Notes under the pieces: generated by a model
What the model was told of the DNA's origin: nothing
Databases searched by the model: none
The model's input: the letters and a program-made list of their open reading frames with translations, nothing else
Shown: one piece after another, positions 16,245 through 38,744 of the stretch
How the letters are laid out: each line of letters begins with the position of its first letter
Numbering within the stretch: position 1 is the first letter of the stretch
Position numbers and translations under genes: made by a program
Source of the DNA: Ostrea edulis
Lineage: Eukaryota
DNA: 64,000 nucleotides
Direction of reading: 5' to 3'
NCBI RefSeq assembly: GCF_947568905.1
Contig: NC_079165.1
Location: 10,850,001-10,914,000, forward strand

Positions 16245-16447
16245 CGCGTTATTACGCCTTTAATTTACATCAGTAGGCCCATCCTTTACGTTATTACGCC
16301 TTTAATTTACATCAGTAGGCCCATCCTTTACGTTATTACGCCTTTGATTTACATCAGTAGGCCCATCCTTTACGTTATTACGCCTTTAATTTACATCAGT
16401 AGGCCCATCCTTTACGTTATTACGCCTTTGATTCGCGTTATTACGCC
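16245..16447. repeat. 42-bp tandem repeat, about 4.5 copies
   Basis: Unit TTATTACGCCTTT(A/G)ATTTACATCAGTAGGCCCATCCTTTACG. Confidence 0.9.
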
Positions 16448-18380: not shown

Positions 18381-18439
18381 GATTCAACTATTAAAAGTTG
18401 ACAAGATTGTGACCAAATCAGACGAAAAGCTGACAAATC

Positions 18440-19633
18440 ATGAAAAACATGCATTTCAAATTAGTTTTGATCGTTTGTATTTTTCACTCTGTGTACTCCT
18501 ACAATGTCACTGACGAGGGGCGGCTAATCACGGATTTGTTCTCTAACTACAATAGAGACCTTCGTGCTGGAAATGACAGGGATTACCCACTGAAAGTGTT
18601 GATGAATTTGTTTCTGTTTGCAATAAAAGAATTTGTGAAGGCGAGCAGCAAATTCACAGTAAATGGCGTGTTTTCAATCACTTGGCGAGATGGACGTTTA
18701 TCCTGGGATCCAGCGACGTACAATAACATCATGGATACACAAGTGTTCCAGGATAAAGTATGGGTACCCAACATCGTGACTGTAAACCCATTCGAAGAGG
18801 CCTACGGACTCGGAAGTAATCTCGTCCAGGTTTCCGTGCATAATGACGGATCCTGTTTGTGGACAACCATGCAGTCTTTTGAAGTTATCTGTGACGCAGA
18901 TGTAAGGTATTATCCTTTTGATAAGCAATACTGTGCACTCAGGTTTGTTGCTTATTCTTTGGGAGTAGGTTGGTTAAATCTATCTTTCTCAGATTCTAAG
19001 GTATTTTTAAGAAATTATGAAGAAAGTGGGTTATGGGAATTCGAGGACACGACCAACGATTGTTAAGTAGAGGGCTCCACATATGTAGTAGTCGGGCTGC
19101 ACCTAAAACGGAGATCTACTTACTACCTAGCGAGTCTCATACTTCCTATGACAGTCATAGCCATTTTGCAGGCATTCGTTTTCCTCCTTCCCTATGAGGC
19201 TGGTGAGAGGGTCGGGTTTTCCGTGACCATTCTTCTGACAAGCGTGGTTTTCCTGACCATCATTCAGGGGAAACTTCCCGAGGCGTCCGAACCAAATATT
19301 TTTGTTCTCGGATTTCTTTTGTTTGGATATGTGATTTTAGGAGCAGTTGTTACTCTGTGTGTGATTCTCAGTGCAAACATCCACTCGTTTAAGGAGGGCT
19401 CCTATATCCCAAATTGGTTAAATTTTTTATGTTGTTTGAAAGCAAACACAGTGGATGGCGTGCTTTCATCTAAAGGTGATATGAAAGTTGCACCAATGGA
19501 GGAAGAAATGGACGAAGCATCTCCATCATGTTTTTGGAATGATGTAGCCAAAGGGTTTGACAGATTCTGCTTTATTTCTTCATTGCTTTTGTATGCAATT
19601 CAACTAATTGTTTATTTCTGGTTAACAGCCTGA
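18440..19633 (+). pseudogene. Intronless Cys-loop ligand-gated ion channel (nAChR-like) copy 1 with one in-frame TAA at 19064-19066
   Basis: ORFs 18440-19066 and 19148-19633 share a frame and align end to end with copies 2 and 3; signal peptide, Cys-loop CDADVRYYPFDKQYC, M1-M4. Confidence 0.9.
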
Positions 19634-19880
19634 ACATTCCCACCAGATTTTAATTATTTGATTAATGCGTGCATAATATCCTATCAACAGTATACAATTC
19701 TAACGAGCACCAATCCACCAAACAAAATTACAAATGATATTGATATATTTTGAGATCATGGGCTAGTTTGCTTTCTTTTCATGGGAAGAAATTAATGAAA
19801 TATACTATATGTTACAGGTGTGCTTTCAAAATGGACGAAATGCTTCAAAATTTTGTATTGCCATAGTTATATCGTGCGGT

Positions 19881-20149
19881 GTGGTTGGTTGGTTGGTTGA
19901 ATTGTTTATCGTCGCTCTTGAGAATATTTCACTCATATGGAGACGTCACCTTTGTCGGTGAAGGGCTGCAAAATTTAGACCTCTAATCAGTGCTTATGGC
20001 TTTGGAGCGGGGAGGGATCTTTATCGCGCCACACCTGCTGTGACACGGGACCTCGGTTTTTGCGGTCTCATCTGAATGACCGCCCCATTTAGTCGCCTCT
20101 TACGACAAGCAAGGGGTACTGAGGACCTATTCTAACCCGGATCCCCACG
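19881..20149 (-). mobile_element. Full-length SINE-like element with non-tRNA head and (AACC)n tail
   Basis: Head GTGGGGATCCGGGTTAGAATAGGTCCTCAGTACCCCTTGCTTGTCGTAAGAGGCGACTAA; 3' body shared with the tRNA-SINE at 52306. Confidence 0.8.
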
Positions 20150-20580
20150 TGCGGAGTGGAAGTGGATGGAACAGGAGTTTACCTTTACTACATTAATATG
20201 TATTCTTCACTTTCCCAGAATGCAATATGGTCTAAATATGGTCTAAAGTAGATTTTTTCATTTATATGTTGTTTTACAACCTATTTAAGAATTTCTACCT
20301 CCTATGGGGACAAACTGTACACAGGAAGCCACAGAGTTTGATGTCTTGCACGGCGATCAAGTCCGAAGCAGAGAGGGTTATTTATCGTGTGAACACACAC
20401 CATGATACGGAACCTCCGTTTTCAGTGATATCCGAAAGAGCCATTAATTTTGCCTCCGATAGTTACCAATTTTAAAGGTTTTTAATTTGACTCGACCACT
20501 TAAAGAAAGCAAGGAGAATATTTTTAAATGGATATTTAAGAAATGAATTTCATTTTTAAAGAGATTATAGAGAATATTAC

Positions 20581-21237
20581 TTGCCAAAATCCATATTATA
20601 TGTCATATCAGACTGAGTGACCCCATATCAGCCCGAGGGCCAAAGACCCGAGGGTTGATATGGGGCTCGAGGGCTGATATGACATATGATATGGATTTTG
20701 ACATGCAATATTCTATTTATCAGACTGAGTAACCCCATATCAGCCCGAGGGCCAAAGACCCGAGGGTTGATATGGGGCTCGAGGGTTGATAGGACATATG
20801 ATATGGATTTTGGCATGCAATATTCTATTTATCAGACTGAGTGACCCCATATCAGCCCGAGGGCCAAAGACCCGAAGGTTGATATGGGGCTCGAGGGTTG
20901 ATAGGACATGATATGGATTTTGGCATGCAATATTCTATTTATCAGACTGAGTGACCCCATATCAGCCCGAGGTTTGATGCAATGTTCTATTTATCATATA
21001 CTACGCTTTTTAAATGCATAGATATCGTATACGATTTTTAATTTGATCAGAGTCCGGGAGCAATTTTATAAAATTTTATACTTTTCATCACATGAGGGTT
21101 ACTGTTTTAGCATTTTAAAGGTACATCAAGGAATATGTGGTACATTACGTTACTATGGTACAATAAAAACTTGATGCAATGATATTCTGGTACTCGGTGC
21201 AGAATCGGCATAATCATTACCAAGTATATGATAAATA
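20581..21237. repeat. 112-bp hairpin-containing tandem array (3+ units) joined to a short TIR module
   Basis: ATCAGACTGA recurs at 20607, 20719, 20831 and 20941; CTATTTATCATATAC near 20987 is inverted at about 21223-21237. Confidence 0.8.
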
Positions 21238-21402
21238 GGGTATGAACTGTGAAGTTTCATGGCATTAGCGGTTCATGAAAAGTATGCCGGTGTGTAGCTT
21301 TGCAGTTCATACCCTGATGAAGTTTCAAAAATGAAATTTATTTCTTATACTTACATTCTGCTTTCGTTTCTGTTGGTATTCCCAGCCGTTAAAATAAACA
21401 TA

Positions 21403-21498
21403 CTATAGCTATCAAGATTCATTGTCGGTATTTAAACATGCTATAGCTATCAAGATTCATTGTCGGTATTTAAACATGTTATAGCTATCAAGATTCAT
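21403..21498. repeat. 38-bp tandem repeat, about 2.5 copies
   Basis: CTATAGCTATCAAGATTCATTGTCGGTATTTAAACATG. Confidence 0.85.
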
Positions 21499-21772
21499 AC
21501 TCGCCTACAACTGTAGCGCGATCATGAGGAAATGGCTATTATTACAATTTGTAAAGATATCAAAGGCAAAGCATCGGAAGTGTAAACATATGTCAATATT
21601 GTAAGCACATTTAGCATCACAAGATCTACCGTGTCACCACGTATAATGGCAAAACAAACCTTTCTTTCGAGTGTCGGCAAGTTGCTCTTGTATGATTGTA
21701 GGAAATGGTTATATATGTAAACATAAATTGTGAAATAAAAATGGATAAAAAATTCGATAGTGGTAATGAACC

Positions 21773-21956
21773 ACTCTTGAATTATGTCCATTCATTACCA
21801 ATCTGATCAAAATCAGATCTTTGATCCGCTCCGTTATTGTTATGTCGCTACACACAGAGCGGATCAAAGATCTTTGTTTAGCGACATAACAATAACGGAG
21901 TGGATCAAAGATCTGATTTTAATCAGATTGGTAATGAATGGACATAATTCAAGAGT
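21773..21956. mobile_element. CAATCTG-type palindromic MITE (21799-21930) with 26-bp inverted flanks
   Basis: Same TIR as 11835-11942; 21773-21798 is the exact reverse complement of 21931-21956. Confidence 0.8.
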
Positions 21957-22195
21957 TCCTAGTACTGCACGCTGATGCTGAATCCAATTCGATATTGGTA
22001 ACAGTTGCAATTTAAAATAACATAATACAATAGAAATGGAAATTGTTTGTCTCGATTTTAATAGAAAAATGGAAGCTTTATAAAGCGATTTGTATATTGA
22101 TATAACTATTGTAAGTAATTGTGGCAAAGTAATGATCGCTTCTAATAGCATTACACAAAAGAAAATCAATGGATCCAATTTCAATTTCTCTTTCA

Positions 22196-22561
22196 CCATG
22201 ATGCTGCCGAGAGGGTTGACTTTTCCGTGACCATTCGTCTGATAAGCGTGGTTTTACGAGACATTTCCCAAGGCATCCGAACCAAATACAGTGTATTTCT
22301 GTTCTCCAATTGTTTACTCAGTAAGAACATCCACTCATTCACAGAAGCCACCCATATGCCAAAATGGTTAAAATTTTCATGTTCATTGAAAACGAAATAG
22401 ACCTTAAGTTTTCATCTACAAGTGCAATGAGAGTCACAGCAGAGGGGGGAGAAGAATTCCTATGGAAGGATGTAGCCAAAATATCTAATAGATTTTGCTT
22501 TGTTTCCTGGTTGGTTCTGTATGCAATTCAAACAATTGTTTATATTAATTTAACAGCTTGA
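22196..22561 (+). pseudogene. Degraded 3' fragment (M2 to M4) of a fourth Cys-loop receptor copy
   Basis: GAGAGGGTTGACTTTTCCGTGACCATT.., CATCCACTCATTCACAGAAGCCACCCATATGCC.. and 'WKDVAKISNRFCFVSWLVLYAIQTIVYINLTA*' match the paralogs, with deletions and frameshifts. Confidence 0.85.
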
Positions 22562-22869
22562 CCACCCGTATACACCATATTTTGATTGTGCAGTGGCCTG
22601 TGTATGATCTACACTTTGTAGATGATATTATGTAAACAATATACTTGCCATTGTATTTTATTTTACTTGTATTACAATGTTGGATGTCTCATCTCCCCTT
22701 TCTTAGAAAAATACTAGTTAATGAAATCATACCAAACTCATTGTATGTTTGGAATACATGAGTGTGGTTGTTTCATACGAATTGTTTTAGTGATAATTGA
22801 CGACACCCGTTATAGAAGAGATCGCCCGATAGTTGTTTATCAGCGATGACTTGCTAGATGTTGGTTGTA

Positions 22870-23102
22870 TAATGTTTAACGTCCCATTCAAGAATTTTTC
22901 GCTTGTATGGTGACTTCACTATTGTCGGTGAAAGGCTGAAAAATTTAGGCCCATGCTCGGCGCTTACGGCCTTTGAACAGGGAGGGCTCTTTATCGTGCC
23001 ACACCTACTGTGATACGGGTCTCGGTTTTTGCGGTCTCATCCGAGGGACCGCCCCATTTAGTCGCCTCTTACTGAGGTCCTATTCTAATCCGGGTACTCA
23101 CG
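22870..23102 (-). mobile_element. SINE-like element with non-tRNA head (internal deletion)
   Basis: Similar to 19881-20149. Confidence 0.7.
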
Positions 23103-23476
23103 GGATTAGATGATATAAAAGGAAAATTATGCAATGAAAATTAGAAAATACATAAAGCAAATGAAAAATATCTACATACACAATCAATTCAGAAAAAGGC
23201 GAGGACATCTAATTACGTCATTATCAAAATCCAGCACCCGGAGGTCAGAAGTCAGATTAAACTGTCAACCGTCTAATGTTATCTTTAAAAAAAAAGGATA
23301 GTGGAAGTTGGGAATATAGCTATCAACATTGTCTAGTGGGGAGGTCAGATCTAGAACATAGTCCAGATGTCAGATTTTTTTTTTTTTTTAAAGAATTAGC
23401 GAAGTTTATTCATACTTCAAAGTGCCCTTACAATGTTCCAGACATTCGGGCGCATGTCTTGATAACAAGAAAACAT

Positions 23477-23478
<2 letters not shown>

Positions 23479-23523
<45 letters not shown>
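23479..23523. repeat. (TA)n microsatellite at the 3' end of the Tx1 LINE
   Basis: Direct reading. Confidence 0.95.
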
Positions 23524-23525
<2 letters not shown>

Positions 23526-23529
23526 CGCA

Positions 23530-26500
23530 TCACAATATATTACAAATTTTTTCAAACATATCATTGAAATCTATATGTAGCTTTTTGTATACATGAGAGT
23601 ACATCTTTAAAGAAGCTTAAACATGCATGTATATATTTTCGGTACTTTCTTCAATTTCTTTGATTCTACAGTACATCTTGTATTTGTAAATAACAGTTGC
23701 TATAGTAGAAATTACGTTATTCAAAATGACAATTCTGTGGTTGTTTTTAAGATAAAATCCAATAAGAATGTGTTTCCATTTGATGTCAAATTTGACAACC
23801 TTTGACGTTATTTCCCATATATGCTTTACATTTTCACAAAAATAAATCAAGTGTTCATTGTCTTCAACATTTTCTTTACAAAATTCACACATGTTTGATT
23901 CGGTTTTCTTTATTTTCATGAGAAAAGATTTGTTACATAGAAGATTATTGAGAAGTTTAAATTTAAATTCTGCTACCTTTTTTTCATACATATCTACGAT
24001 TTTGTTTTTGTAAATGAGACTCCAGGAGGGTTTATTAATATTTAAAGTTCTGCTATAGTAGGATTGATACAGGGGGGTATGAAATTTCCTTTGAACAAAA
24101 ATGGTATACATCTTTTTCGATGAAATATCAGTTATTTCAAGAGGTTTTTTCATTGATGTAATTTCAAAGATGAGTTTCAAGCTCAGGTTTTGATAGGGTA
24201 AATCTTGAAAATTCAAATTTCTTAGCTTTATAAAAATATTACTCATGATTTTGTATTCGCATAAAATATTTCTTTTTCTCTTAAGATTATCGTAAAACCA
24301 TTCAATGGGTTTAATACCATTTTCATCAACAATATTAACCACATATCTTAAACCACTTTGTATCCAATTTTCAAAAAATACACATTTTCCTTTATATTGA
24401 AAAAGTTTGTTACATCACAATGGTTAACATAGAACTTCATACAATTTCATATCATTGATGTCCTGGCATCTTTTGCATGAATTGAAAAATATGAATAATT
24501 CAGTATAGAACATGTTGAAATTGCTAATTAGTTCAAAATCATTCACAACTGTAGCATTTGTTTTCAGTATATATTCGATATCAATATTTCTTTCAATACA
24601 AAAACTATTTAAAAAATCTTTTAAACTGGCATTGGAGTAATATATCTTCTTCACTCACGCTGCCTTTAATGACTTTATTTTGGATTCAATATCAACTAGA
24701 TTGATACCTCCTTTAGATATTTTCCCAATCATCGTATTTCTTTTTATTCTGTCCTTTTTGTTCCAAATAAAATGAAAAAAATTTTTACTAAGAAGTTTGA
24801 TTGTTTGATCTTTTGGATAATCGAGTATAGATGCTGTATATATAAATTTTGATATATAGCAAGATTATTGATCAGACACACCTTTCCAAAAATTGTTAAT
24901 TTTCTTTTTTTCCACGATTCAAAAAGCTTTTCTACATCATCTATCTTTTTTTGTCCAGTTATTTTTTTAACATAAATCTTTGTCATGCCCAATATGTATA
25001 CCTAATACCCTTACACATGTGTCATTCACTGTAATACCATCTATATCTGCATATTGACCTTTCAGTGGTCCTAATAAAATGCACTCTGTTTTTGAAAGGT
25101 TTAATTTCATACCAGAGAACTTACTAAAAGTATTGATTTCACTAATCGCTGATTTTACAGAAGTAATATCTTTCAAAGGTAATGTACAATCGTCAGCATG
25201 TTGTAATGTTTTTACTTCACAATTCATACCTTTCTTTTTAAAACCATGTATTTCGTCATTATGACGTAATCTAATAGACAGTATTTCAGCAACAAACAGA
25301 AACATTATCGCCGAGATCGGACACCCTTGACGGATGCCTCGCATCATTGTACATCGTCTTGAGAGCCAATTATTATTTTTAAGTCTAAAAACAGGATTTT
25401 TGTATAGAATTTGAATCCATTTGATGAATTCTTGACCAAAATTAAAGCACTCTAGTGTTTTTATCATAAATGTCCATTCGACAGAATCGAACGCCTTTTG
25501 AAAATCTAGTAAAAGTAAAATTACCTCTTCATTATTATTTTCACAATATTAAAAAATGTCAACAATAAGTCTAGCATTCATACCAATATATCGGCCTTTT
25601 ATGTAGGCAGACTGATCTTTTGATATAACATTTTCCAATATTTTTTGTAATCTTTTTGCTAATACAAAGGCTAAAATCTTATAATCTGTATTGGTAAGGC
25701 TGATAGGTCTATAATTATTCAGGTGTCTTTTATCTCCCTTTTTATACAATAGTGAAATGACAGATAAACGTTGTGAATACGTAAGTGATTCTTTTTCATA
25801 TGAACTTTTCATGCAAGAATAAAAATGACTCTTTAGCTCATTCCAAAATTTCTTATAAAACTCTGATGGTATTCCATCTGAACCAGGATATTTGTTCTCC
25901 TTCATATCAAATAAGGCATCTGTATATTCATCAAGATCTGGAAATTGGTTTAACATATTCTTGTCATTATCGCTTAAAACATTCTCAAAAATTGTATTTT
26001 GTAAATAATCATTCAATTCACAATTTTCGTTTTCTTTTTGATTTGTATATAATTTTTCATAAAAGTCACACATGGTTTTCAAAATATCTTCATCTTTATG
26101 TATAACTTTATTTTTCTCATTGAACAATTGCTTAATTGTGTTTTTGGACTGACGACTCTTTTCCAAACGCATAAAATATGCTGAACTCTTTTCACCATTT
26201 TCAATCCAATTAGCTCGTGATCTTATTTGAGCACCAACTGCTTTTCGATCAATTAAAACATTTAGTTCATTTTCAAGATTTCTTTTTTCGTTCATGTCTA
26301 TTAAAATGAATCCATATTTTCTATACTAAATATTTTGTTCTCAATATACCTTATTCTTTCTTTGATTTTTTTGTTTACTCGTAATGAAAAGCTGATACAA
26401 AAAGATTTGATACAATATTTCAAATTTTCCCACGATACTTGTGGGTCTGCACTAAAATTATCAAATTTTTTAATATATGATTTCATGTCCAAAACAAAAC

Positions 26501-26973
26501 TTTCATCTTGCAGTAAGGATATATTAAATTTCCAGTAACCTGGACCTCTCTCGTTCTTATTCCTTAATATATGTAATGACAAGCATCGATGATCGCTCAT
26601 TCTAGTGCCATTTGAATGAGTACCGGGTATTCGTCTAATACCAACACCTTTGATTTCATAGATAAAAAGCTTTGTGATAAATATGTAATCAATACGACTT
26701 CTGGGGGCGTCGCTTGCATCACACCAAGTATATCCAGTTTTGTCTGGATGCAATTCATTCCATATATCACATAAATTTAAGTTAAGTAAGCATTTACTCA
26801 AAATATTGCTACATTTATCATGAGAGTACATCTTTAAAAAGCTTTAACATGCATGTATATATTTTCGGTACTTTCTTCAATTTCTTTGATTCTACAGTAC
26901 ATCTTGTATTTGTAAATAACAGTTGCTATAGTAGAAATTACGTTATACAAAATGACAATTCTGTGGTTGTTTT
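23530..26973 (-). mobile_element. 5'-truncated L1/Tx1-clade LINE ORF2 (APE endonuclease C-terminal half, RT, C-terminal Cys/His motif), disrupted
   Basis: 'YTW..SRIDYIF..SDHR..RGPGYWKFN', 'GAQIRSRANWIENGEKSSAYF', 'YRPISLTNTDYKILA', 'GIRQGCPIS..HADD', 'CEFCKENVEDNEHLIYFC'. Confidence 0.92.
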
Positions 26974-27024
26974 CAGATGTCAGATATAGCCGTCAACATA
27001 ATCAAATTTATGAAGAAATTTAAA

Positions 27025-27560
27025 GAAAGGCGAAGATAGCGAACAGTGATCAATCTCATAAATCCCACAGGAATACAAAATAAAATGTTGGGCAAAACAC
27101 AAACCCCTGGACACACCAGGGTTGGGATTAGGTACCTAGGAGGAGTAAGCATCCCCTGTCTACCGATCGCACCCACAGTGAGCCCTATGTCTTGACCAGG
27201 TAAACAGAGTAATCTGTAGTCAAAATCACTGTGCCAATAACGACCTAACAATCGGTAGGAAACACGTCAAACAGCATTTGACCCAATGATAGGTTACACA
27301 GGCAAACTAGATCATTATAACGACCATAGAATTTGCGAAATGTTGACTTTAAAAGAGACTGTTAAAACCCCTGTAACATCAACTTGTTTGTCTGTAACTT
27401 GTCTCGATTTAAAACTGATCATACGCAAAACGAGCTCTTGCGTATAGAATCAGTTGAGAGATATAAACACCATATGCAGGTGATAATGAAATATTGCTAC
27501 ATAAGTATGGGAAGTTGACGATGGAGAATATGAAATCATCTTGTCAAGGTCAGAAAATAA
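27025..27560 (-). mobile_element. Penelope-like (Naiad-type) 3' fragment, more diverged copy
   Basis: Parallel, diverged copy of about 27617-28140. Confidence 0.8.
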
Positions 27561-27616
27561 GATTAAGCGATCAATATGGTGTAGTTTTCTACAGTAAATT
27601 TGCTTGTTCCCAATGC

Positions 27617-29425
27617 AAGGTGAAGATAACGAACAGTGATCAATCTCATAACTCCTATAAGCAATACAAAATAGATAGTTGGGCAAACACGGACACCTGG
27701 ACACACCAGAGTTGGGATCAGGTGCCTAGGAGGAGTAAGCATCCCCTGTCGACCGGTCACACCCGCCGTGAGCCCTATATCCTGATCAGGTAAACGGAGT
27801 TATCCGCAGTCAAAATCAGTGTGCCAAGAACAGTCTAATAATCGGTATGAAACACGTCAGACAGAATTTGACCCAATGCGAGGTTGTATTGACGAACTAG
27901 ATTGTTATAACGACCATAGAATTTGCGAAATGCTGACTTCAATCGAGAGTGTTGAAACCCCTGCACCATCAACTTGTTTGTGAGTAGCTTACTTCTATTT
28001 AAAAACTGACTATAAGCAGAACAAGATCTTGCATATCGAATCAGTTGAGATGTATGAACACCACATGCAGGTGATAATGGAATATTGCTACATAAATATG
28101 GGAAGTTGACGATGGAGAAGGTGAAATCATCCCGTTTGTCATACAGTTGAGTTGTCAGTTTGCCGTTAATGTCTACTTTCAATAAAATATCTAAGTATGA
28201 AGCAGAAGTGGACGACTCTGTGGTGTCCTTTATTTCGAGCTCACAGGGAAATATCAAATCGACATATGAATGAAAGCTATTATTATTAATAGACAAAACG
28301 TCATCGATATATCTAAATGTCGAATTGAAGGCCACAGCGAGAGATTTTTTCTTCTCGCGTTGAAGTTTTTGAATAAATTCGGCTTCATATGAATATAGAA
28401 ACAGGTCAGCTAACAAAGGAGCACAATTCGTGCCCATGGGAATTCCAACAGACTGTTGGAAGACCTGATCACCAAAGACCACGAAGATATTGTCAATGAG
28501 GAACTCTAGCATATTTTTTATTTCAACTTCAGAGTACTTGTGCGTGGAATCAGAGTGGTGTTTAACAAAGTAAGTTTTTGAATGACTGATCACTAGATAT
28601 GAATATTTCCGTTTTTGTTGAAGAAGCAACTGTCTATGATGTCAAAAAGTCTAGTCTTTAATTTATCGTGAGGAATGATCGTGTATAGTGTTGAAAAGTC
28701 ATAAGTTTTAATGTTATTGATTTGGGAAAAATTCTGCGATTTCAAGTTTACTAAAAGTTCTTTAGAATTTTTTAGAATCCACATTTGATTAACATCACTT
28801 CTGGTATATGTAGTCGCACAGTACGTTTGAAGTTTCTCCTTCACAGCTGTTAATATTTTCGTGAGGAGAAAAGATAGGGGCTTAATAGAGCACTTACTGG
28901 ATCCAGCAATGTATCTTTGTAAGGGTTTTTATGTAGTTTAGAAATCCAGTATAGGTACGGTAACTCATATTCATTCGACCCAATTGACTGGGATATTAAA
29001 TGTGTCTAAAACTGAAGCATGGTTTTGAAGAATTTCATCTTTTGAAAGGGCAGTTGGGGTATATGTATGATTACCAAAAGTGGAATTAATGCCAAGTTCG
29101 TTTACAATACAACTAGTTTTGTCAGCTGGAACCAAAACATATTCCTCATGTAACATATCTAATTCTTTTATCACTTCTGGTTTACTAGACACACAGAAGG
29201 ATAGATGGTACGTACTTTTGTTTTCATGTGTCTAATGCGGGATTTTAATATCCCTCTTACGCTTTTAACACATTCTGACATTGTATCAAGTTCTTCGTTT
29301 TCATATTTAGCCCATCGTCTGGCATAATCTTCGACAGAATTCATAATAGAGATGAAGTTCTGTCGCCAATTAAAAGACCGATGTTCTCTGTATTTAGGAC
29401 CTTTTAGAATAAGTGATTTGAGGTC
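27617..29425 (-). mobile_element. 5'-truncated Penelope-like retroelement RT (Naiad/Chlamys-type, no C-terminal GIY-YIG)
   Basis: 'KGPKYRE', 'VLVPADK', 'LYWISKLHKNP', 'TYDFSTLYTIIPH', 'GIPMGTNCAPLLADLFL', 'FRYIDD', 'LYDKRDDF..NFPYL'. The ORF ends shortly after the RT; frameshifts present. Confidence 0.88.
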
Positions 29426-30004
29426 CTCATGCCTTTGAATTTTATGACAATATTATATCTAAAGCAGAGACAAAAGTTTAAAATGGATGTATGTAAATTG
29501 ATTGAACAACTGTATTGTCTTGTATTATTCAGTATATGAAGAAGTGTCAAGTTACAAATTATCACGACAAAACAACAAAGTAAACTTGACCTGTTTCTCT
29601 TTGTTCTAGAATTATGTTTCTTTTGATCATTGCATTTAAGTGCAGTTCATATTTCTTTATGTAATAATAAATTGTGAACGAAAATGGCTAATCATTTCAG
29701 CTCATTAACGAGATACTTTAAACGTAAATGATTATGTCCATACGAATCGAATAATCAGGAAAAAAGTAGGTGTAATTGACGTGTGTTGATACTTACAATT
29801 ACTGGATTGTATTTCTATTGAAATTAAATCCCTTCAATGCAAGCCGTTTAAATATTGATAAAGCTGCTCGATAAATGATTCTGAATTAATAACACGAATA
29901 ATCGTGTCTAATACCACCACACAAAGACAAATCACGTCAGCTGATTTTACTATACGCGCAAGTGACAAAAGTGTTGCGAAATAAGAGAAGATATCAGACA
30001 AATT

Positions 30005-31201
30005 ATGAAAAATATGCATTTCAAATTAGTTTTGATTGTTTGTATTTTCCATTCTGTGTACTCCTATAATGTTACTGACGAGGGTCGGCTCTTCACGGAC
30101 TTATTCTCCAACTACAATAAAGACCTTCGTGCTGGAAATGACAGGGACTACCCACTTAACGTGTCGATGCAATTCTATCTGCTCGCAATAAAAGAATTTG
30201 TGGAGGCGAGCAGCAAATTCACGGTAAATGGCGTGTTTGCAATCACTTGGCGAGATGAACGTTTATCATGGGATCCAGCGACGTACAATAACATCACGAA
30301 AACACTAGTGTTCCAGGAAAAAATATGGATACCCAACATCGTGACTGTAAACCCATTCGAAGAGGCCTACGGACTCGGAAGTAATCTCGTCCAGGTAAAT
30401 GTGGATAATGAGGGATCCTGTTTTTGGGTGACCATGCAGTCTTTTGAAGTTATCTGTGACGCAGACGTAACGTACTATCCTTTTGATAAGCAATATTGTG
30501 TACTTAAGTTTGTTGCTTATACTCTTGATGTAGACTGGCTAAATATATCTTTCCCAAATTCTGAAGTCACTTTGACGAATTATGAAGAAAGTGGGTTATG
30601 GAAAATTGAGGACACGGCCAACTATTGTTATATAGAAGAAGGATCTACATATGTAGTGGTCGGGTTGCACCTAAAACGGAGATCTACTTACTATCTAGCG
30701 AGTCTCATACTTCCTATGACAGTCGTGGCCATTTTACAGGCATTCGTTTTTGTTCTACCTAATGATTCTGGTGAGAGGGTCGGGTTTTCCGTGACCATTC
30801 TTCTGACAAGCGTGGTTTTCCTTACCATCATTCAGGAGAAACTTCCCGAGGCGTCCGAACCAAATATTTCTGTTCTCGGATTTCTTCTGTTTGGATATGT
30901 GATTTTAGGAGCACTTGTTACTCTGTGTGTGATTCTCAGTGCAAACATCCACTCGTTTACGGAAGCCACCCATATGCCAAAATTGCTAAGATATATATGT
31001 TGTTTGCAATCAAACATAGTGGAAGGCACCCTTTCATCTAGCAGTACGATGAAAGTTGCATCGAAGGAGGAAGAAATGGAAGAGGAGCCCCCATCATGTT
31101 CTTGGAATGACGTAGCGAAACGATTTGACAGATTCTGCTTTATTTCCTCCTTGTTTCTATATGCTATTCAAGTAATCATTTACTTTGGATTATCAGCTTG
31201 A
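30005..31201 (+). CDS. Intronless Cys-loop ligand-gated cation channel subunit (divergent nAChR-like), copy 2, 398 aa
   Basis: Signal peptide, WxPNI, Cys-loop CDADVTYYPFDKQYC, pre-M1 KRR, M2 GERVGFSVTILLTSVVF, short M3-M4 loop, WNDVAKRFDR before M4. Confidence 0.95.
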   Translation: MKNMHFKLVLIVCIFHSVYSYNVTDEGRLFTDLFSNYNKDLRAGNDRDYPLNVSMQFYLLAIKEFVEASSKFTVNGVFAITWRDERLSWDPATYNNITKTLVFQEKIWIPNIVTVNPFEEAYGLGSNLVQVNVDNEGSCFWVTMQSFEVICDADVTYYPFDKQYCVLKFVAYTLDVDWLNISFPNSEVTLTNYEESGLWKIEDTANYCYIEEGSTYVVVGLHLKRRSTYYLASLILPMTVVAILQAFVFVLPNDSGERVGFSVTILLTSVVFLTIIQEKLPEASEPNISVLGFLLFGYVILGALVTLCVILSANIHSFTEATHMPKLLRYICCLQSNIVEGTLSSSSTMKVASKEEEMEEEPPSCSWNDVAKRFDRFCFISSLFLYAIQVIIYFGLSA

Positions 31202-32235
31202 ACTCCTCTCGTCAACCCAGAGTAGGGGGTAATCTTGATCGTTGTGTATGTAATACAGGATAAATAAGGTACCTCTTCATGTAGTTTATGCGTAATAATA
31301 TCTTGGAAACAGACATTGGCTGCATTATTAAAGAAAAAATGGAAATCATGTAAACTGCAAGGTACCTGCATATTTGCAATACTTCACGTGATGCATGATT
31401 GTGTTGTTTGAATTTTAAGTCCTAGTAAAAAATGATTACTCAAGGAATTGGAATGAATGCATAGAAAAAGTCTTTCACATTTCCTGTCGAGCGACGGAAG
31501 AATTCCTATGTGTCGTCTAACCCCTTGTTGTTCGTGAACTCTTGAATAAAGATGACTTCTCCTTTCATTAGAATTGTGTGAATATAACGTTTTACGAAAT
31601 TATTGCAATATTTTCATTTCAAATTACTCTCATTTAGTAATGTGAATGTTTTTTTTAAGGATTATTACCAGTATGATAGTTCTCTATAAACGAATCATCG
31701 TTTTCTTGCATACTATGTTAATGCTCTCTCAAATTTGAATTGTTTTACTTCGTACACTAGTAATCATATAAGATGCAACTGAATTGTATTTGATAGTATG
31801 GATGATCAAGAACCTTGGAAACGGCCATCAAAGTTTAGGTTTGTCCTAATGGAATGATAACTGTATGGATTATTTGATTATAGATTGATATTCGAGCTAC
31901 CAAAGCGAAGTTTACTAAATACTTGGGTATACTGCTCCTTTAAATATTAATTAAACTATCGAAGTAATGACTTGGGAAATTGTTGTTTTCGGGAGAAGAG
32001 GGTTATGGTGTTCTTGTTCGTTAAACCGGGATTTGTTGTTCCTCTAGACCTGCCATTTATTGAGTGGATGTTTCCAGTCACGAAAGACATGCACGAGATA
32101 ATGGGGGTTGTGGAGGTATTTAGTGAAATTATTAAGATTGGGTTGTGTGTTCAAGTCTAACTTTCTGGTCTGCAGTATTGTTTATGAAATTGGAATATAT
32201 AATTAAAACTGATTTCCTTCCTTCAGTCTCCTTAA

Positions 32236-32789
32236 GGTTGATCGATCCTCATGTGATGTCATAGGTTTTTGCAAAATCTTTATTCAATTAAATTTTGCGA
32301 ATGATAGAAATATATTTTTCAGAGGAATTTTATTCACTGAATAAAATAAAAAAAAAGTAAGCTTTTGATAATGAAAAAGTTTTTATTTTCCATAGATAAT
32401 CAATTATTTATAATTTAAAAAATTGTCAAGGGCAATAACTCCTATGCTGGAATTTCCTCTACTGCATGTCTATGACACAATGATTTCCCTAATATCCACA
32501 ATTAATCTTTATATATCTATGAATTAGCAGTTTTCTTAAACTGTTGACAATTAAAATTTGTCATTTCAGTAGGTTTTTATTGATTTTCATTATTCTGTTT
32601 AACGAAAATGTGTGATTTTTAAATGTTGATATATACTTCTGGTTTTGTATGTCTGACATCTTTAAAAAGGTGGCAACATACACATTTTCTTTGGTTATTA
32701 ATTAAATTAAACTATATTGAGTGGAAATTAATACAGTTTTCCCACTTTTAACCATTCACATTGATAAGTCACGTGAGGATCAATCCACC
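32236..32789. mobile_element. Non-autonomous Kolobok-type DNA transposon
   Basis: TTAA at 32232-32235 and 32790-32793; imperfect TIR GGT(T/G)GAT(C/T)GATCCTCA(T/C)GTGA. Confidence 0.8.
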
Positions 32790-32944
32790 TTAATTGAATT
32801 GGATTCTGCTGACGAGTAAATGTGACCTATTTTTTAACCACCTATCTTTTTCATTAAAAGAAATCAAATCTGAAAATAAGTTTTACTTCTTCACATTTTT
32901 TCTTATTAGAAATAAAATCTGATATCCTCAACTCGTATGTGAAA

Positions 32945-33270
32945 AGCTGAAGAAAGCGAACAGTGATCAATCTTATAACTCCAATAAGGAATACAAAAAC
33001 GGTTGGGCAAACACGGATCCCTGGACATAGCAGAATTGAGATCAGTTGCCTAGGAGGAGTAAGTATCCCCTGTCGATCGGTCACACCCGCCGTGAGCCCT
33101 ATATCTTGATCAGGTAATCGGAGTTATTCGTAGTTAAAATCAGTGTGTCAAGAACAGCCTAAAAATTGGTATGAACACGTCAGAGAGCAGTTGACCCAAT
33201 GATAGGTTGTATTGGCAAACTAAATCGTTATAAACACCATGGAATATGTGAAAAGCTTATTTTAAACGAG
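32945..33270 (-). mobile_element. Penelope-like 3' end fragment
   Basis: Matches 27617-27950. Confidence 0.75.
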
Positions 33271-33754
33271 ACAGTTTCCGTACAGTGGACGATGTTGATG
33301 GTTTCCTTGCTTCCACTGATGTATCCTCAGCTTCTCATCAAAGTATGACAATGGCTCCTTAATAGGCAGCACCTTCTTTGAGCTGAGTTACATTGTATAC
33401 CTTTTCTCTCTATTTTTCTGTAATTGGTCTCAACCGTTGATACTCGATAAATAATGCACATCAGCTAACTGTTAACAGAGTCCAATTTCACTCAGTACAT
33501 TTCACTTCCGGGAAGTAAGATCGAACCATTAACATGGTCCAATTTTAATAGGTAGATTTATTACTTACGGAAAGTTAGAGCTACCATAGTCCATTCCATG
33601 AAGGAGACAGGTTCGGGAAGTTAACCTCAACATTGCTCAATATCATTAAAAAGTAGATTTCAGTTACGAACAGTAAGATTTATCATTAACCAAGTTTATC
33701 AACACATGTACAAAGAGATGAAACATGAAAACACAACTGACTTTGACTACACAT

Positions 33755-33915
33755 TGCTCCGTTTACCTGATCAAGATATAGGGCTCACGGCGGGTGTGAT
33801 CGGTCAACGGGGGATGATCTTCGTAGGCCATCTCTACGGTGTGTTCAGAGATGCTGGTTTGTCCTACCCTTAATTTTGTATTCTATATAGGAATGAGATT
33901 GATTATTGCTCGTTA
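33755..33915 (+). mobile_element. Penelope-like 3' end fragment, split by a later transposon
   Basis: ..CCTGATCAAGATATAGGGCTCACGGCGGGTG..; continues as TCTTCAC after 35441. Confidence 0.7.
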
Positions 33916-35438
33916 GGCCATCCTTAAAAAATTGTATGTTTGCTGTAACGCGACTCAGATTTTTCAGTGTGGGTAGGTAAGTAGGCTTTCTTTTTTTTTG
34001 AAAATCACTTACTATATTGATTTGTAAATGAGCAAAATTGCGATGTACACTAGGACAACACATTAAAGATTTCAAAACTAATAACTTTACTTCAAGAACT
34101 GAACTGGAGTCAAGTTTTCAATGCAGAATGTAAATAGATTGCAATAAACAGGTACTGGTATATATTTATATTTACATGTACATTCTGTTCTATATAACAC
34201 TACCAAGTAGACAATGGGTTTATGGTCTCATGAATTACCATTCTCTCGTGCCAATGTGACGTCACTCAAGCTAGCTTTCAGCCGAAGGTTAGACATATTA
34301 GACAAATTTTACCATTAGTCAATAAAAAATTAATATTAGAACTTACTAAAAAATATATTCAGGAGATAATGTATTTAAATACAAATACATTGTAACAACT
34401 GTCTAGTTTGGGAGCGTTACAAGTTGATAATGCGATTGGCCCACATAGTGCTTTCACCAGCGTTTATGTCAATTATCATGTGATCTAAACCTAAACAAGA
34501 GTTATTCCTTATTTGTATCGTGATACATTATGTTTATTTTGTGTGTATTGTAGTTTATAGGTATAACATAATTATACTAAATCTCACTTTGAATGTGCCT
34601 ACTGTTACACACTAATTAGGTACACAAGACACGGACAGCATTCAGACTTTATGAATATATAGGTACATGTATATATGGGCAATATGGAAAGGTATTGCTA
34701 TTATACATTACAAGTGTAATTATTTGTCAGTCCCAGTCGATCTTCAACAGATACTAAAATAAAGTTATCTATGACTAGATCTATATTTAAATGTTTATAT
34801 GTCTTCCATTTTGAAAACCTGTGAATTGTTGTTTGTCAACCAAAAAGTTACGCACTTTTTAGGTACTTGGTGGCTGCATTAAAACGTCGAATGCATTTCT
34901 GCTAGGCCTATAGTTTTAACTTGCAATTGGGACTGCTGGTAATCCAAGTCCCTTACAGTGGGTATCATTTTAATTTTTTGTCAAAGTCTATTAAAACACT
35001 AATTAATCATATGGACACGCATGATATGTAGAATCAGTGTGTGGGTTGGCAGCAACTGATGACCTCCGAGGTCAATGCACATTGGAGATGATGAGCAGGA
35101 ATTACTGTCATGAAGACAATAATTCATGAATTGACATATTAATATATTGATACGATAGGTTTATGAAGAATATTCAATCACAATTATGTTATTCAATTTG
35201 TTCTTTTATTTTTCAATTCATTTACCGTCAGTTACAGCATATATTGCTTTAAATTGACAGTCACAGTAAACGTGACCATGGACTTGTCCACCATGTTGGA
35301 TTTTTTTTTTTTGAATCTCAATCTCGATCAAAAAAAAACAAAACAACAGCTTTCAGAGTAGCCATAATAAAATTGAGTCGCGGTGTTTTGAGTGGGTCGG
35401 TCGCGTTACAGCAAACATACAATTTTTTAAGGATGGCC
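33916..35438. mobile_element. Non-autonomous DNA transposon with TTA TSD and GG..CC ends (Zator- or PIF/Harbinger-like)
   Basis: TIR GGCCATCCTTAAAAAATTGTATGTTTGCTGTAACGCGAC at both ends; TTA at 33913-33915 and 35439-35441. Confidence 0.8.
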
Positions 35439-36384
35439 TTATCTTCACTTTTTCATTGAAGAAACTTCTGTTACGGATACTCGTGCCTAACCTTTAACGT
35501 GTTTAATTTCATTAACACAGACTTTACTTACAGGATGTCAGATTTAACCGTTTTCATATTCCACTTTGAGCAAGGAGACTTCATTTACAGGAATATTAAC
35601 TATTAACACTTGCATTGTCAAGGATATAGACACGGGAACTTAACAGTGAACAGTAGTTAATTTTATTAATGAGACTGAAAGTTGCAATTAGAAGTCAAGT
35701 TTAACCGTTATCAAAGTTTATTAATTGCTTTAGAGACTCCAGGGAATCGGATTTTACAGTTCACATACTCTCATTTATAGTACGACAATTAAGATTTTCT
35801 AAGCCTACTTGGTTTGTTTCCATTCAGACGTTATTGATTTTGCAACAATTTCATATCTAACGCAGAAGGAAAAGATTTGTAATCTAATTCCAATTTCTTT
35901 TGTATTATGCTTCAGTATATTTAGAGAAGTATCGAGTTACCAATTAACATAGCAAACAATAAATCATATTGATCACTGTTCGTTATCTTCGCCTTTCATA
36001 TGACCCATTTTTCTGTGGTCTGTTGGGAAGTTTCTTTAATGTTCTTGTTATTTACTGTTGTGTATTTCATGATTTTCTGTTTAAACATAAATGATGAAAT
36101 AAAACAAATCAAAGCTGAGAAGTAATTGTATTAATGTGTGATAGCACTTGACGTAATTAATTTGATCACGGAAACAATCGCCACTTAAAAATTACAATAA
36201 ACTACAAATCACGTTCATTCTTTTCTGAAGCAAACCAATACCCTTCATTGAAGGTCGTTAAGTCTATCATGATGGCTGCTGGTATAATCACCGCCATTAA
36301 TCGTTTACAACTCCCTCACGGAATGAAAAACCACGATATCCCGATCACCTATCAAATTAAATGAAGAGTTAGTGGCTAACGAAG

Positions 36385-37581
36385 ATGAAGTTCATGCATT
36401 TCACATCAGGTTACTTCATTTGTATTTTCTATTCTGTGTACTCCTACAATGTTACTGACGAGGACCGTCTATATAGGGACTTATTCAACAACTACAATAA
36501 AGAACTTCGTGCTGGAAATGACAGGGACTACCCACTGAACGTGTCGATGCAATTCTATCTACTTGCAATAAAAGAATTTGTGGAAGCGAGTAGCAAATTC
36601 ACGATAAATGGCGTGTTTTACACCCATTGGCGGGATGAGAGGTTATCTTGGGTTCCAGCCAAGTACAACAATATTACAAAAACATTAGTATCTCAGGATA
36701 AAGTATGGATACCAAATATAGTGAACATAAACCCTTTCAAAGAGGTATACGGACTAGGAAGTAATCTCGTCCAGGTAAATGTGGATAATGAGGGATCCTG
36801 TTTTTGGGTGACCATGCAGTCTTTTGAAGTTGTCTGTGACGCAGACGTAACGTACTATCCATTTGATAAGCAGTTTTGCGCACTTAGATTCGTTGCTTAT
36901 ACTGTCGGAGTAGACTGGCTAAATATATATTTCCCAAATTCTAAAGTCACTCTAACGAGTTATGAAGAAAGTGGGTTATGGGAAGTCGAAGACACGACCA
37001 ACTATTCTCATACAGAAGAAGGTACCACATTTGTAGTGGTCGGGCTACACCTAAAACGGAGGTCTACTTATTATATAGCGAGTCTCTTACTTCCTATGAC
37101 AGTCGTGGCCATTTTGCAGGCATTCGTTTTCCTTCTTCCCAATGATGCCGGTGAGAGGGTCGGGTTTTCCGTGACTGTTCTTCTCGCAAGCGTGGTTTTC
37201 CTGACCATCATTCAGGGGAAACTTCCCGAGGCGTCCGAACCAAATATTTCTGTTCTCGGATTTCTTTTGTTTGGATATGTGATTTTAGGAGCACTTGTTA
37301 CTCTGTGTGTGATTCTCAGTGCAAATATCCACTCGTTTAAGGAGGACACCTGTATGCCGAAATGGTTAAAAATTTTATGTTGCTTAAAAACAATCGATGC
37401 GAAAGGTCCATTTTCAACTAATATTGTGATGAATGTTGAACCACAGAAGGAGGCAAAGGAAAAAGAATGTCGATCGTGGTCTTGGAAGGATGTAGCCAAA
37501 CGATTTGACATGTTTTGCTTTATTTCCTCATTGTTTCTGTATGTACTTCAAATAATCATTTACTTTGGATTAGCAACTTGA
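36385..37581 (+). CDS. Intronless Cys-loop ligand-gated cation channel subunit (divergent nAChR-like), copy 3, 398 aa
   Basis: Colinear paralog of copy 2; Cys-loop CDADVTYYPFDKQFC; M2 GERVGFSVTVLLASVVF. Confidence 0.95.
   Translation: MKFMHFTSGYFICIFYSVYSYNVTDEDRLYRDLFNNYNKELRAGNDRDYPLNVSMQFYLLAIKEFVEASSKFTINGVFYTHWRDERLSWVPAKYNNITKTLVSQDKVWIPNIVNINPFKEVYGLGSNLVQVNVDNEGSCFWVTMQSFEVVCDADVTYYPFDKQFCALRFVAYTVGVDWLNIYFPNSKVTLTSYEESGLWEVEDTTNYSHTEEGTTFVVVGLHLKRRSTYYIASLLLPMTVVAILQAFVFLLPNDAGERVGFSVTVLLASVVFLTIIQGKLPEASEPNISVLGFLLFGYVILGALVTLCVILSANIHSFKEDTCMPKWLKILCCLKTIDAKGPFSTNIVMNVEPQKEAKEKECRSWSWKDVAKRFDMFCFISSLFLYVLQIIIYFGLAT

Positions 37582-38420: not shown

Positions 38421-38478
<58 letters not shown>
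38421..38478. repeat. (AG)n microsatellite
   Basis: Direct reading. Confidence 0.95.
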
Positions 38479-38479: not shown

Positions 38480-38744
38480 ACATGCTTGTATATCAAATCA
38501 ATTTTAATCAAAACATTGCTAAATAACAATTAAAAAGATTTCAATATTCTATGTATTATCTATGATTGTGTGGCTGTTATTTTAGATTGTGATTCAGGCA
38601 TTGGCACACTAAAGAATCCTCACTGCTACGGCCCTGAGCGCTAAGCAGAGGTCTGTATTTGTGGTACTTCACCTACATCTGCAGGTGATATCTCAATATG
38701 AGTGAAACATTCTCAACGAGACGCAAAAAAGAACCAAAAACCAG

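What the first reader, a model, noticed from the sequence alone, without database searches (positions are those of the whole stretch)
18440..37581. Tandem cluster of intronless Cys-loop receptors lacking the acetylcholine-binding signature: candidate bivalve chemosensory channels
Seen: four same-strand paralogs (two intact at 398 aa, one with a nonsense codon, one fragment), all intronless. In a hand alignment to nAChR alpha7, loop A Y93 becomes V/I (WIPNIVTVN), loop B W149 becomes Y (FVAYT) and loop D W55 becomes V (NGVF). Loop C is about 6 residues shorter with no vicinal Cys-Cys. The pore keeps cation-channel features (E-1', L9', V13', no Pro-2'). Copies differ at ligand-facing loops (loop C NDC*VEG / NYCYIEEG / NYSHTEEG; loop D FSITW / FAITW / FYTHW) while M1-M3 is almost invariant. 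Established: bivalves have expanded intronless nAChR-like genes, and cephalopod chemotactile receptors evolved from nAChRs by losing these residues. Inference: this may be a parallel, uncharacterised receptor family for non-cholinergic or environmental ligands.
Basis: partly seen in the sequence, partly recalled or inferred. Interest (0 to 1): 0.8.

Follow-up and report, generated by a model that had tools for sequence, protein, structure and literature searches.

The report
Oyster orphan nicotinic-like channel gene cluster
This stretch of the flat oyster genome holds a small tandem family of intron-free nicotinic-receptor-like ion channel genes that have lost the usual acetylcholine-binding residues. 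It is a real but fairly ordinary example of a gene expansion already described in bivalves, and nothing here shows yet that these channels sense chemicals.

Summary
The window (Ostrea edulis, chromosome-scale contig C2) carries, on the + strand, two intact 398-aa intronless Cys-loop genes (c2 at 30005-31201, c3 at 36385-37581). It also carries a copy with one TAA stop (c1, 18440-19633) and a decayed 3' fragment (22179-22558).

All copies have W55->V, Y93->V/I and W149->Y, no vicinal Cys, a loop-C hairpin 6 residues shorter than canonical, and a cation-type pore (G-2', E-1', L9', V13').

The cluster is not exceptional. Of 85 full-length intronless paralogs sampled from this genome, none has the vicinal Cys or the full canonical triad. 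The expansion, intronlessness, tandem arrays and variable binding domain were published by Jiao et al. 2019. A chemosensory or alternative-ligand reading has already been floated (Alpo4 paper, eLife 2023; MolluscaGenes preprint, 2026).

- The copies form an oyster-family-only clade.
- They are under purifying selection (omega about 0.2).
- Their binding loops diverge about twice as fast as the rest of the extracellular domain; an alpha-type control clade gives 0.8-fold.
- No codon class has omega above 1 (M2a vs M1a, p = 0.98).
- The "invariant" M1-M3 is partly gene conversion.

Expression could not be tested, so the chemosensory role stays a hypothesis. The scan holds a similar note on another piece of this genome (s1-302175).

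The parts
18440..19633 (+). c1: full-length receptor copy disabled by one TAA stop (19064-19066, in loop C) with a one-codon deletion beside it; otherwise in frame
   Evidence: It is 80% identical in protein to c2. Three-taxon arithmetic on the distances gives omega about 0.45 on the c1 branch and about 0.21 on the c2 branch, so inactivation is recent or the stop is a segregating null allele.
18399..18439 (+). 41 nt of upstream sequence shared between c1 and c2 (matches 29963-30004); this is the only flank homology between copies
   Evidence: blastn of the flanked copies. Upstream of it, the - strand carries an ORF with a YADD motif (17990-18454; no Pfam hit).
22179..22558 (+). Decayed 3' fragment (M1/M2 to M4) with an internal deletion and a frameshift; it belongs to the same Ostrea subclade
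   Evidence: tblastn and blastx; 64-68% nucleotide identity to the 3' parts of c2 and c3. No trace of the extracellular domain lies upstream.
30005..31201 (+). c2: intact 398-aa non-alpha nAChR-family subunit gene. Signal peptide about residues 1-20, extracellular domain 21-232, M1-M3 233-322, short intracellular loop of about 48 aa, M4 about 371-398.
   Evidence: AlphaFold2 model with mean pLDDT 87. Foldseek best matches are nAChR chains with TM-score 0.8.
36385..37581 (+). c3: intact 398-aa paralog, 78% identical to c2
   Evidence: DNA contigs from two independent runs match it with no differences.
30785..30934 (+). M2-M3 stretch of c2 (codons 261-310), 93-99% identical in nucleotides among all three copies: a likely gene-conversion tract
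   Evidence: Sliding-window identity. The proportion of synonymous differences in M1-M3 is 0.08-0.16, against 0.25-0.42 in the extracellular domain (Fisher p = 1e-7 for c1-c3). Between genera the two regions have equal synonymous divergence.

Best explanation
Shown: the region is a lineage-specific tandem array of one oyster-family (Ostreidae) subfamily within the known bivalve expansion of intronless nicotinic-receptor-like genes. It contains two working genes (c2, c3), one recently disabled copy (c1) and one old 3' fragment, which is a birth-and-death pattern. Each intact gene encodes a complete pentameric ligand-gated channel subunit: signal peptide, Cys-loop, four membrane helices, a short intracellular loop and a cation-type pore lining. 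The copies arose after Ostrea split from Saccostrea, or were homogenised since. They exchange sequence by gene conversion in M2-M3. They are kept by purifying selection, while their binding loops evolve about twice as fast as the rest of the extracellular domain.

Inferred: the canonical acetylcholine contacts are missing on both the principal and the complementary face, yet an invariant loop-B tyrosine and other clade-specific aromatic residues are kept. The subunits therefore most likely form, or contribute to, cation channels that are not gated by acetylcholine at a classical site. They would be orphan receptors for some other small ligand, or modulatory subunits. Which ligand, which partners and which tissue are unknown.
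For: - Identity: Pfam LBD and TM domains; best solved relatives are nAChR alpha6, Torpedo alpha1 and alpha4 at E about 1e-38; AlphaFold2 pLDDT 87 with Foldseek TM-score 0.8 to muscle and neuronal nAChRs.
- Organism: three paralog ORFs are identical to named Ostrea edulis proteins.
- Family context: at least 104 scored matches out of 376 candidates in the genome, mostly single ORFs. The survey took 85 full-length intronless ORFs; none has the vicinal Cys or the W/Y/W triad, 82 of 85 have E-1' and 85 of 85 have L9'. Alpha-type genes with GSW and YxCC exist elsewhere in the genome.
- Clade: SH-aLRT support of 100 for an Ostrea clade nested in a 15-row Ostreidae clade. The orthologs also have single-exon coding sequences, and those in Saccostrea lie in tandem.
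- Selection: omega is 0.21 overall, 0.33 for loops, 0.12 for non-loop extracellular domain, 0.11 for M1-M3 and 0.43 for the intracellular loop. Under M1a, 70% of sites have omega 0.12 and 30% are neutral. Neutral-class sites are enriched in the loops (29 of 79 versus 12 of 133, p = 1.5e-6), while Y172 and V77 are constrained.
- Gene conversion.
- Literature: PMC6896357 describes this expansion, its intronless tandem arrays and its binding-domain diversity.
Against: - No RNA evidence could be obtained. No run on record as RNA holds the genes, and the two runs guessed to be RNA give only ambiguous pieces.
- "Not gated by acetylcholine" is inferred from residues alone. A loop-B tyrosine can make cation-pi contacts in other Cys-loop receptors (my own knowledge, not tested here), so an amine or choline-type ligand is not excluded.
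- Fast loops without omega above 1 fit an unused binding site just as well.
- Synonymous sites are saturated between genera, so the site test has little power on the deep branches.
Confidence: 0.72

Rival explanations
1. One reading: these are peripheral chemosensory channels for environmental, food or settlement cues, evolved in parallel to cephalopod chemotactile receptors. They would form homo- or heteropentamers whose remodelled pocket binds non-cholinergic ligands.
For: - They share the gross hallmarks of chemotactile receptors as reviewed in PMC11526382 and PMC10338036: derived from nAChRs, intronless, in tandem arrays, canonical binding residues lost, cation pore.
- There is birth-and-death turnover within the array.
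- Binding loops diverge faster than the scaffold, unlike in the alpha-type control.
- Jiao et al. report the highest nAChR expression in bivalve gill, and responses to environmental change.
Against: - There are no expression data for these genes.
- No codon class has omega above 1, whereas octopus receptor pockets are reported to be under diversifying selection (PMC11526382).
- The same residue losses occur in most of the 85 paralogs surveyed, so the features do not single out a sensory function.
- No chemotactile receptor is among the 60 best solved-structure matches, while classical nAChRs are.
Confidence: 0.15
2. These are accessory (structural or modulatory) subunits that co-assemble with alpha-type subunits encoded elsewhere in the genome and do not contribute a ligand site themselves. 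Their binding loops would then be simply relaxed.
For: - They are non-alpha: no vicinal Cys, and no loop-D Trp for a complementary face.
- The loops fall into the neutral class rather than a positively selected class.
- The pore, M1-M3 and Cys-loop are strongly conserved.
- Many alpha-type genes are available as possible partners.
Against: An invariant loop-B Tyr and a conserved clade-specific set of aromatic residues in the loops suggest the pocket is still used. With well over a hundred such subunits in the genome, a purely accessory role for all of them seems unlikely (inference).
Confidence: 0.25
3. They are still cholinergic, or gated by choline, betaine or another amine. The loop-B tyrosine and other retained aromatic residues would rebuild a cation-binding pocket, so the channels respond to acetylcholine or a related quaternary amine.
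For: - Y172 is invariant and constrained; aromatic residues at 78, 141, 193 and 207 are conserved.
- The best sequence relatives are true nAChRs, and the betaine receptor ACR-23 is among the extracellular-domain matches.
Against: Four of the five canonical contact positions are replaced by non-aromatic residues or deleted, and loop C is shortened and highly variable.
Confidence: 0.15
4. The array is decaying, functionless DNA: all copies are on the way to becoming pseudogenes.
For: One copy has a stop and another is a fragment. No transcripts were found.
Against: Omega is about 0.2 across 11 genes. Intact orthologs are kept in Saccostrea and Crassostrea despite saturated synonymous divergence. 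c2 and c3 are intact, and c3 is identical in independent samples.
Confidence: 0.03

Closest known systems
Expanded intronless nAChR genes of bivalves (Jiao et al. 2019, BMC Genomics, PMC6896357)
   Same: Intronless coding sequence, tandem arrays, lineage-specific duplication, a variable ligand-binding domain and missing principal binding residues. The authors already proposed "binding to diverse ligands" and a role in environmental response. The window's genes are members of this expansion.
   Different: That paper did not cover Ostrea edulis or describe this subfamily. New here are the Ostreidae-only clade with an invariant loop-B Tyr, the per-domain selection figures, the comparison with an alpha-type control clade, and the gene-conversion tract.
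Cephalopod chemotactile receptors (van Giesen 2020; Allard 2023; Kang 2023; as reviewed in PMC11526382)
   Same: nAChR-derived, intronless, clustered cation channels that have lost the acetylcholine-binding signature.
   Different: The oyster genes sit in bivalve-only clades, and solved chemotactile receptors are not among their 60 best structure-sequence matches. No diversifying selection was detected. There is no evidence of sensory expression or of hydrophobic ligands.
Alpo4, an orphan nAChR-like receptor of the annelid Alvinella pompejana (eLife 2023, PMC10338036; probably the PDB 8bx5 series, by my inference)
   Same: A lophotrochozoan nAChR-like subunit without the vicinal Cys. It is not activated by acetylcholine or serotonin and is regarded as a functional orphan. 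The 8bx5 chain is among the better extracellular-domain matches (rank 15, E 3e-20).
   Different: Alpo4 keeps the aromatic residues (F103, W159, Y199, Y205, W65). The oyster clade has replaced W55, Y93 and W149.
Divergent and CR-like clades in the MolluscaGenes nAChR survey (2026 preprint, PMC13174522)
   Same: The preprint reports molluscan clades with substitutions at agonist-coordinating positions, and a CR-like clade that includes bivalves. It raises the idea of an ionotropic chemosensory role.
   Different: That survey is based on transcriptomes and names no Ostrea genes. I could not determine which of its clades the window's genes fall in.

Membership tests
Cys-loop pentameric ligand-gated channels, nAChR branch | Neur_chan_LBD plus Neur_chan_memb domains above the Pfam cut-offs | tested here: met
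   140 and 60 bits for c2, against cut-offs of 26 and 28.1; c3 is similar.
Cys-loop pentameric ligand-gated channels, nAChR branch | Cys-x13-Cys loop, four membrane helices and the subunit fold | tested here: met
   C151 and C165 are invariant. The AlphaFold2 model has helices at 228-250, 258-279, 290-317 and 367-397. Foldseek TM-score is 0.8 to nAChR chains.
Cys-loop pentameric ligand-gated channels, nAChR branch | Cation-selective M2 signature (no Pro at -2', Glu at -1', Leu 9', Val 13') | tested here: met
   G256, E257, L267 and V271 in c2. Actual selectivity was not measured.
Alpha-type (agonist-binding) nAChR subunit | Vicinal Cys-Cys at the tip of loop C | tested here: not met
   Absent in c1-c3 and in all 11 clade members. 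The control P0112 and the alpha-type genes L101-L106 have it.
Alpha-type (agonist-binding) nAChR subunit | Aromatic box: Tyr93 (loop A), Trp149 (loop B), Tyr190 and Tyr198 (loop C) | tested here: not met
   Y93->V/I and W149->Y; the loop-C hairpin is 6 residues shorter, so positional homology there is ambiguous. A Tyr/Phe at position 207 is conserved.
Complementary-face non-alpha nAChR subunit (beta2, gamma or delta type) | Loop D Trp55 | tested here: not met
   Val in 10 of the 11 clade genes and Leu in one.
Bivalve expanded intronless nAChR genes (Jiao 2019) | Single-exon coding sequence, tandem arrangement and lineage-specific duplication | tested here: met
   Single ORFs. Orthologs are called as single-exon coding sequences. 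There are four same-strand copies within 19 kb. The Ostrea-specific clade has support of 100.
Cephalopod chemotactile receptors | Membership of the chemotactile receptor clade | tested here: inconclusive
   All near relatives are bivalve. No chemotactile receptor chain is among the 60 best PDB sequence matches or the 50 listed Foldseek matches. No such sequence could be put on the tree.
Cephalopod chemotactile receptors | Diversifying selection on pocket residues | tested here: not met
   M2a versus M1a gives LRT 0.04, p = 0.98. Loop omega is 0.33. Power is limited: 11 genes and saturated synonymous sites.
Cephalopod chemotactile receptors | Expression in peripheral sensory cells; gating by non-cholinergic (hydrophobic) ligands and not by acetylcholine | not testable with these tools
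   No RNA run holds the genes. The laid contigs are ambiguous.

The most novel reading that the evidence does not exclude
The Ostreidae-only clade with an invariant loop-B tyrosine and fast-evolving loops encodes channels gated by an external, non-cholinergic cue (food, biofilm, settlement or conspecific chemicals) in gill, mantle edge, palps or larval sensory organs. That would be an independent bivalve counterpart of cephalopod chemotactile receptors, and a first function for part of the huge bivalve nAChR expansion.
Probability: 0.15. Interest if true: 0.7.

Novelty: new member of a known kind. Interest (0 to 1): 0.3.

Why it matters
Bivalves carry 100-200 nicotinic-like receptor genes whose function is an open question. 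If some of them proved to be environmental chemosensors, it would explain the expansion and give oysters an ionotropic chemoreceptor family relevant to settlement and feeding.

This cluster offers two compact, intronless genes that are easy to clone, plus a quantified signature: conserved pore, constrained loop-B Tyr and fast loops. It is one of well over a hundred comparable loci in this genome, and nothing found here marks it as a better candidate than the others.

Tried and rejected
- Expression. Two run searches found only DNA-type holders. Two runs guessed to be RNA, from another organism, gave pieces 93-97% identical over the c3 coding sequence and nothing over the unique flanks. That fits transcripts of a congener, and equally a DNA skim of a diverged species, so it does not count as evidence.
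- Logan contig of a Crassostrea-type ortholog (L114, from run SRR5830803). It looks genomic, with no poly(A) end, and no paper mentions that run.
- Positive selection. My own M0/M1a/M2a likelihood code, with the branch lengths of the IQ-TREE codon tree fixed up to one scale factor, found no class with omega above 1. Pairwise Nei-Gojobori omega for the loops is 0.38-0.44.
- Placing the clade relative to cephalopod chemotactile receptors. No such sequence could be obtained through the tools, so this was not done.
- Synteny by tblastx between the window and the Saccostrea and Crassostrea loci. It returned only receptor coding sequences and repeats, which is uninformative.
- Pocket geometry. The tools do not return model coordinates, so I could not check which conserved aromatic residues line the pocket.
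- No complex-prediction job was sent. Assembly of neighbouring subunits is a general property of this family, so a pass would not separate the rival explanations.
- The tRNA scan of 16-40.5 kb found nothing.

Full report
**What is in the sequence**

The ORF list and a tblastn of the 398-aa product against the window show four same-strand copies:
- c1 at 18440-19633. It is in frame throughout apart from a single TAA at 19064-19066 and a one-codon deletion next to it, and is 80% identical in protein to c2.
- c2 at 30005-31201, intact, 398 aa.
- c3 at 36385-37581, intact, 398 aa, 78% identical to c2.
- A fragment at 22179-22558, in two frames, 38-43% identical to residues 247-398.

By blastx the fragment is closest to the Ostrea copies themselves. 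It carries an internal deletion and a frameshift, and no trace of an extracellular domain lies upstream of it. Contigs from two independent DNA runs reproduce c3 with no differences, and runs from nine studies hold it, so the assembly is sound. Between the copies lie reverse-transcriptase ORFs of LINE type on the opposite strand.

**What the genes encode**

c2 and c3 match Pfam Neur_chan_LBD and Neur_chan_memb far above the cut-offs. Their best solved relatives are nicotinic receptor chains: human alpha6, Torpedo alpha1 and alpha4, at E about 1e-38. An AlphaFold2 model built on a 78-sequence alignment has mean pLDDT 87. It shows a signal-peptide helix, the beta-sandwich and helices for M1, M2, M3 and MA-M4, with a short and poorly ordered intracellular loop. 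Foldseek returns muscle and neuronal nAChR subunits with TM-scores near 0.8.

That alignment includes a canonical control, P0112, which shows W, Y, W and YYSCC at the expected columns. In the window's genes:
- Loop D W55 is Val.
- Loop A Y93 is Val or Ile.
- Loop B W149 is Tyr.
- There is no vicinal Cys, and the hairpin from the conserved loop-F Trp to the pre-M1 Arg is 27 residues instead of 33.
- The Cys-loop (C151-x13-C165) is intact.
- The pore has G-2', E-1', L9' and V13', the cation-type signature.

**Which organism, and how unusual the cluster is**

Three paralog ORFs taken from the same genome are identical to proteins named Ostrea edulis, so this is the European flat oyster.

A six-frame search of the whole genome with c2 scored 104 matches out of 376 candidates, nearly all as single open frames; eight have internal stops. 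A canonical query found further loci (87 scored of 393 candidates).

I extracted 85 full-length intronless ORFs and aligned them:
- None has the vicinal Cys.
- None combines W55, an aromatic residue at 93 and W149.
- 53 keep the loop-B Trp. Only c1-c3 and one other have Tyr there.
- 82 of 85 have E-1' and all 85 have L9'.

Alpha-type genes with GSW and YxCC exist elsewhere in the genome, both multi-exon and intronless. Missing the acetylcholine signature is therefore the rule in this expansion, not a peculiarity of this cluster.

Jiao et al. 2019 (PMC6896357) already described the expansion: 99-217 genes in bivalves, intronless, in tandem arrays, with diverse ligand-binding domains. They suggested binding to diverse ligands and roles in environmental response. 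The Alpo4 paper (PMC10338036) and a 2026 preprint (PMC13174522) already draw the parallel with cephalopod chemotactile receptors.

**Phylogeny**

A maximum-likelihood tree of 67 proteins places c1-c3, together with two metagenome-derived contigs, in an Ostrea clade (support 100). That clade sits inside a 15-row clade (support 100) made only of oysters: two paralogs in each Saccostrea species, plus Crassostrea virginica, C. gigas and C. angulata. The sister group is another oyster cluster (contigs C10 and C4) that keeps the loop-B Trp. Outside these come further oyster and scallop clades.

The orthologs are also called as single-exon coding sequences. The Saccostrea pairs lie in tandem, 16 kb and 63 kb apart. 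Homology between the window's copies ends 41 nt upstream of the ATG and a few bases after the stop.

**Selection**

- Pairwise Nei-Gojobori omega between the window's copies is 0.29-0.38.
- On 11 clade genes with DNA, IQ-TREE's GY model gives omega of 0.21 overall, 0.20 for the extracellular domain, 0.33 for the six binding-loop segments, 0.12 for the rest of the extracellular domain, 0.11 for M1-M3, 0.43 for the intracellular loop and 0.33 for loop C.
- My own M0/M1a/M2a code gives, under M1a, 70% of sites at omega 0.12 and 30% neutral. M2a adds nothing (LRT 0.04, p = 0.98).
- Neutral-class sites are enriched in the loops: 29 of 79 against 12 of 133 (p = 1.5e-6), especially in loop C (12 of 17).
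- The loop-B Tyr172 and loop-D Val77 are constrained. Aromatic residues at 78, 141, 172, 193 and 207 are kept in all ten intact genes.
- Synonymous sites are saturated between genera, so the site test is weak on deep branches.

**Is the loop divergence excessive?**

I compared Ostrea with Saccostrea in three clades at similar depth.

| Clade | Loop divergence | Scaffold divergence | Ratio |
|---|---|---|---|
| Window's clade | 0.49 | 0.26 | 1.9 |
| Sister clade (loop-B Trp kept) | 0.36 | 0.31 | 1.15 |
| Intronless CC-bearing alpha9/10-like clade | 0.24 | 0.29 | 0.8 |

For the window's clade, single pairs give odds ratios of 2.5-3.3 (p = 1e-4 to 1e-3); for the alpha-type control the difference is not significant. 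Without omega above 1, it cannot be told apart from relaxed constraint on an unused site.

**The "invariant" M1-M3**

Within the window, the proportion of synonymous differences in M1-M3 is 0.08-0.16, against 0.25-0.42 in the extracellular domain (Fisher p = 1e-7 for c1-c3). Codons 261-310 are 93-99% identical in nucleotides in all three pairs. Between genera the synonymous divergence of M1-M3 equals that of the extracellular domain. The near-identity is therefore largely gene conversion among the tandem copies, not only protein constraint. It also means that the synonymous distances between copies underestimate their age.

**c1**

Three-taxon arithmetic on the distances gives omega of about 0.45 on the c1 branch, against about 0.21 on the c2 branch. 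An ORF with a YADD motif lies on the opposite strand directly upstream of the 41-nt shared leader; it has no Pfam hit. c1 is a recently disabled copy, or its stop is a segregating null allele. I could not check population reads because the one read-laying run had been used on c3.

**Expression**

No run on record as RNA holds c2 or c3. Two small runs of another organism, guessed to be RNA, give pieces 93-97% identical over the c3 coding sequence and nothing over about 2 kb of unique flanks. This fits transcripts of a congener, or a DNA skim of a diverged species, so it is not evidence either way. Expression is the main gap.

**Verdict**

The family itself is already known, and the same features are shared by most of the genome's many paralogs. 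No positive selection was detected, and no expression or ligand evidence exists.

The most likely mechanism is an orphan cation-channel subunit that either forms a receptor for an unknown small ligand or modulates heteromers. A chemosensory role remains a minority hypothesis, at about 15%.

The scan holds a similar, unchecked note on another piece of the same genome (s1-302175).

Noticed in passing
window 23617-26831 (- strand), 27835-28629 (- strand), 17511-18454 (- strand): Reverse-transcriptase ORFs lie between and beside the receptor copies. Those at 23617-26831 and 27835-28629 have Pfam hits (RVT_1, zf-RVT). The two ORFs at 17511-18454 have no Pfam hit; one (17990-18454) carries a YADD motif and runs to 15 nt inside c1's start.
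   Followed up: partly
window 35968-36000, 38600-38967, 39152-39500: Very high-copy short repeats. Summed contig depth reaches about 190,000-236,000 in O. edulis DNA runs at 35840-36023, against about 10 on unique sequence. Loose ends near 38766 read like a tRNA-derived (SINE-type) head, but ARAGORN finds no tRNA there.
   Followed up: partly
window 20606-20972, 16247-16433, 38421-38478, 23479-23523: Tandem repeats: a 112-bp unit x3.3, a 42-bp unit x4.5, (AG)29 and (AT)22.
   Followed up: no
L108 6926-8081 (Crassostrea virginica, about 2 kb upstream of ortholog P0013, opposite strand): A second receptor-like copy that is not among the called genes (56-61% tblastx identity to the window's copies). 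The C. virginica locus therefore also holds at least two adjacent copies, arranged head to head.
   Followed up: no
G000 C1:83.14-83.28 Mb and C1:32.46-32.51 Mb (L101, L102, L105): Clusters of intronless alpha-type (YxCC, loop-B Trp) nAChR genes named alpha-9/alpha-10-like. Intronless tandem expansion in this genome is therefore not limited to subunits that lost the binding residues. I used them as the control clade.
   Followed up: partly
L113 (JGI metagenome 3300045951 contig, 3265 bp) and P0006, P0016, P0017: Metagenome contigs encode 74-80% identical members of the same Ostrea-type clade. They are probably oyster DNA, from another Ostrea species or paralog, in an environmental or oyster-associated sample.
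   Followed up: no
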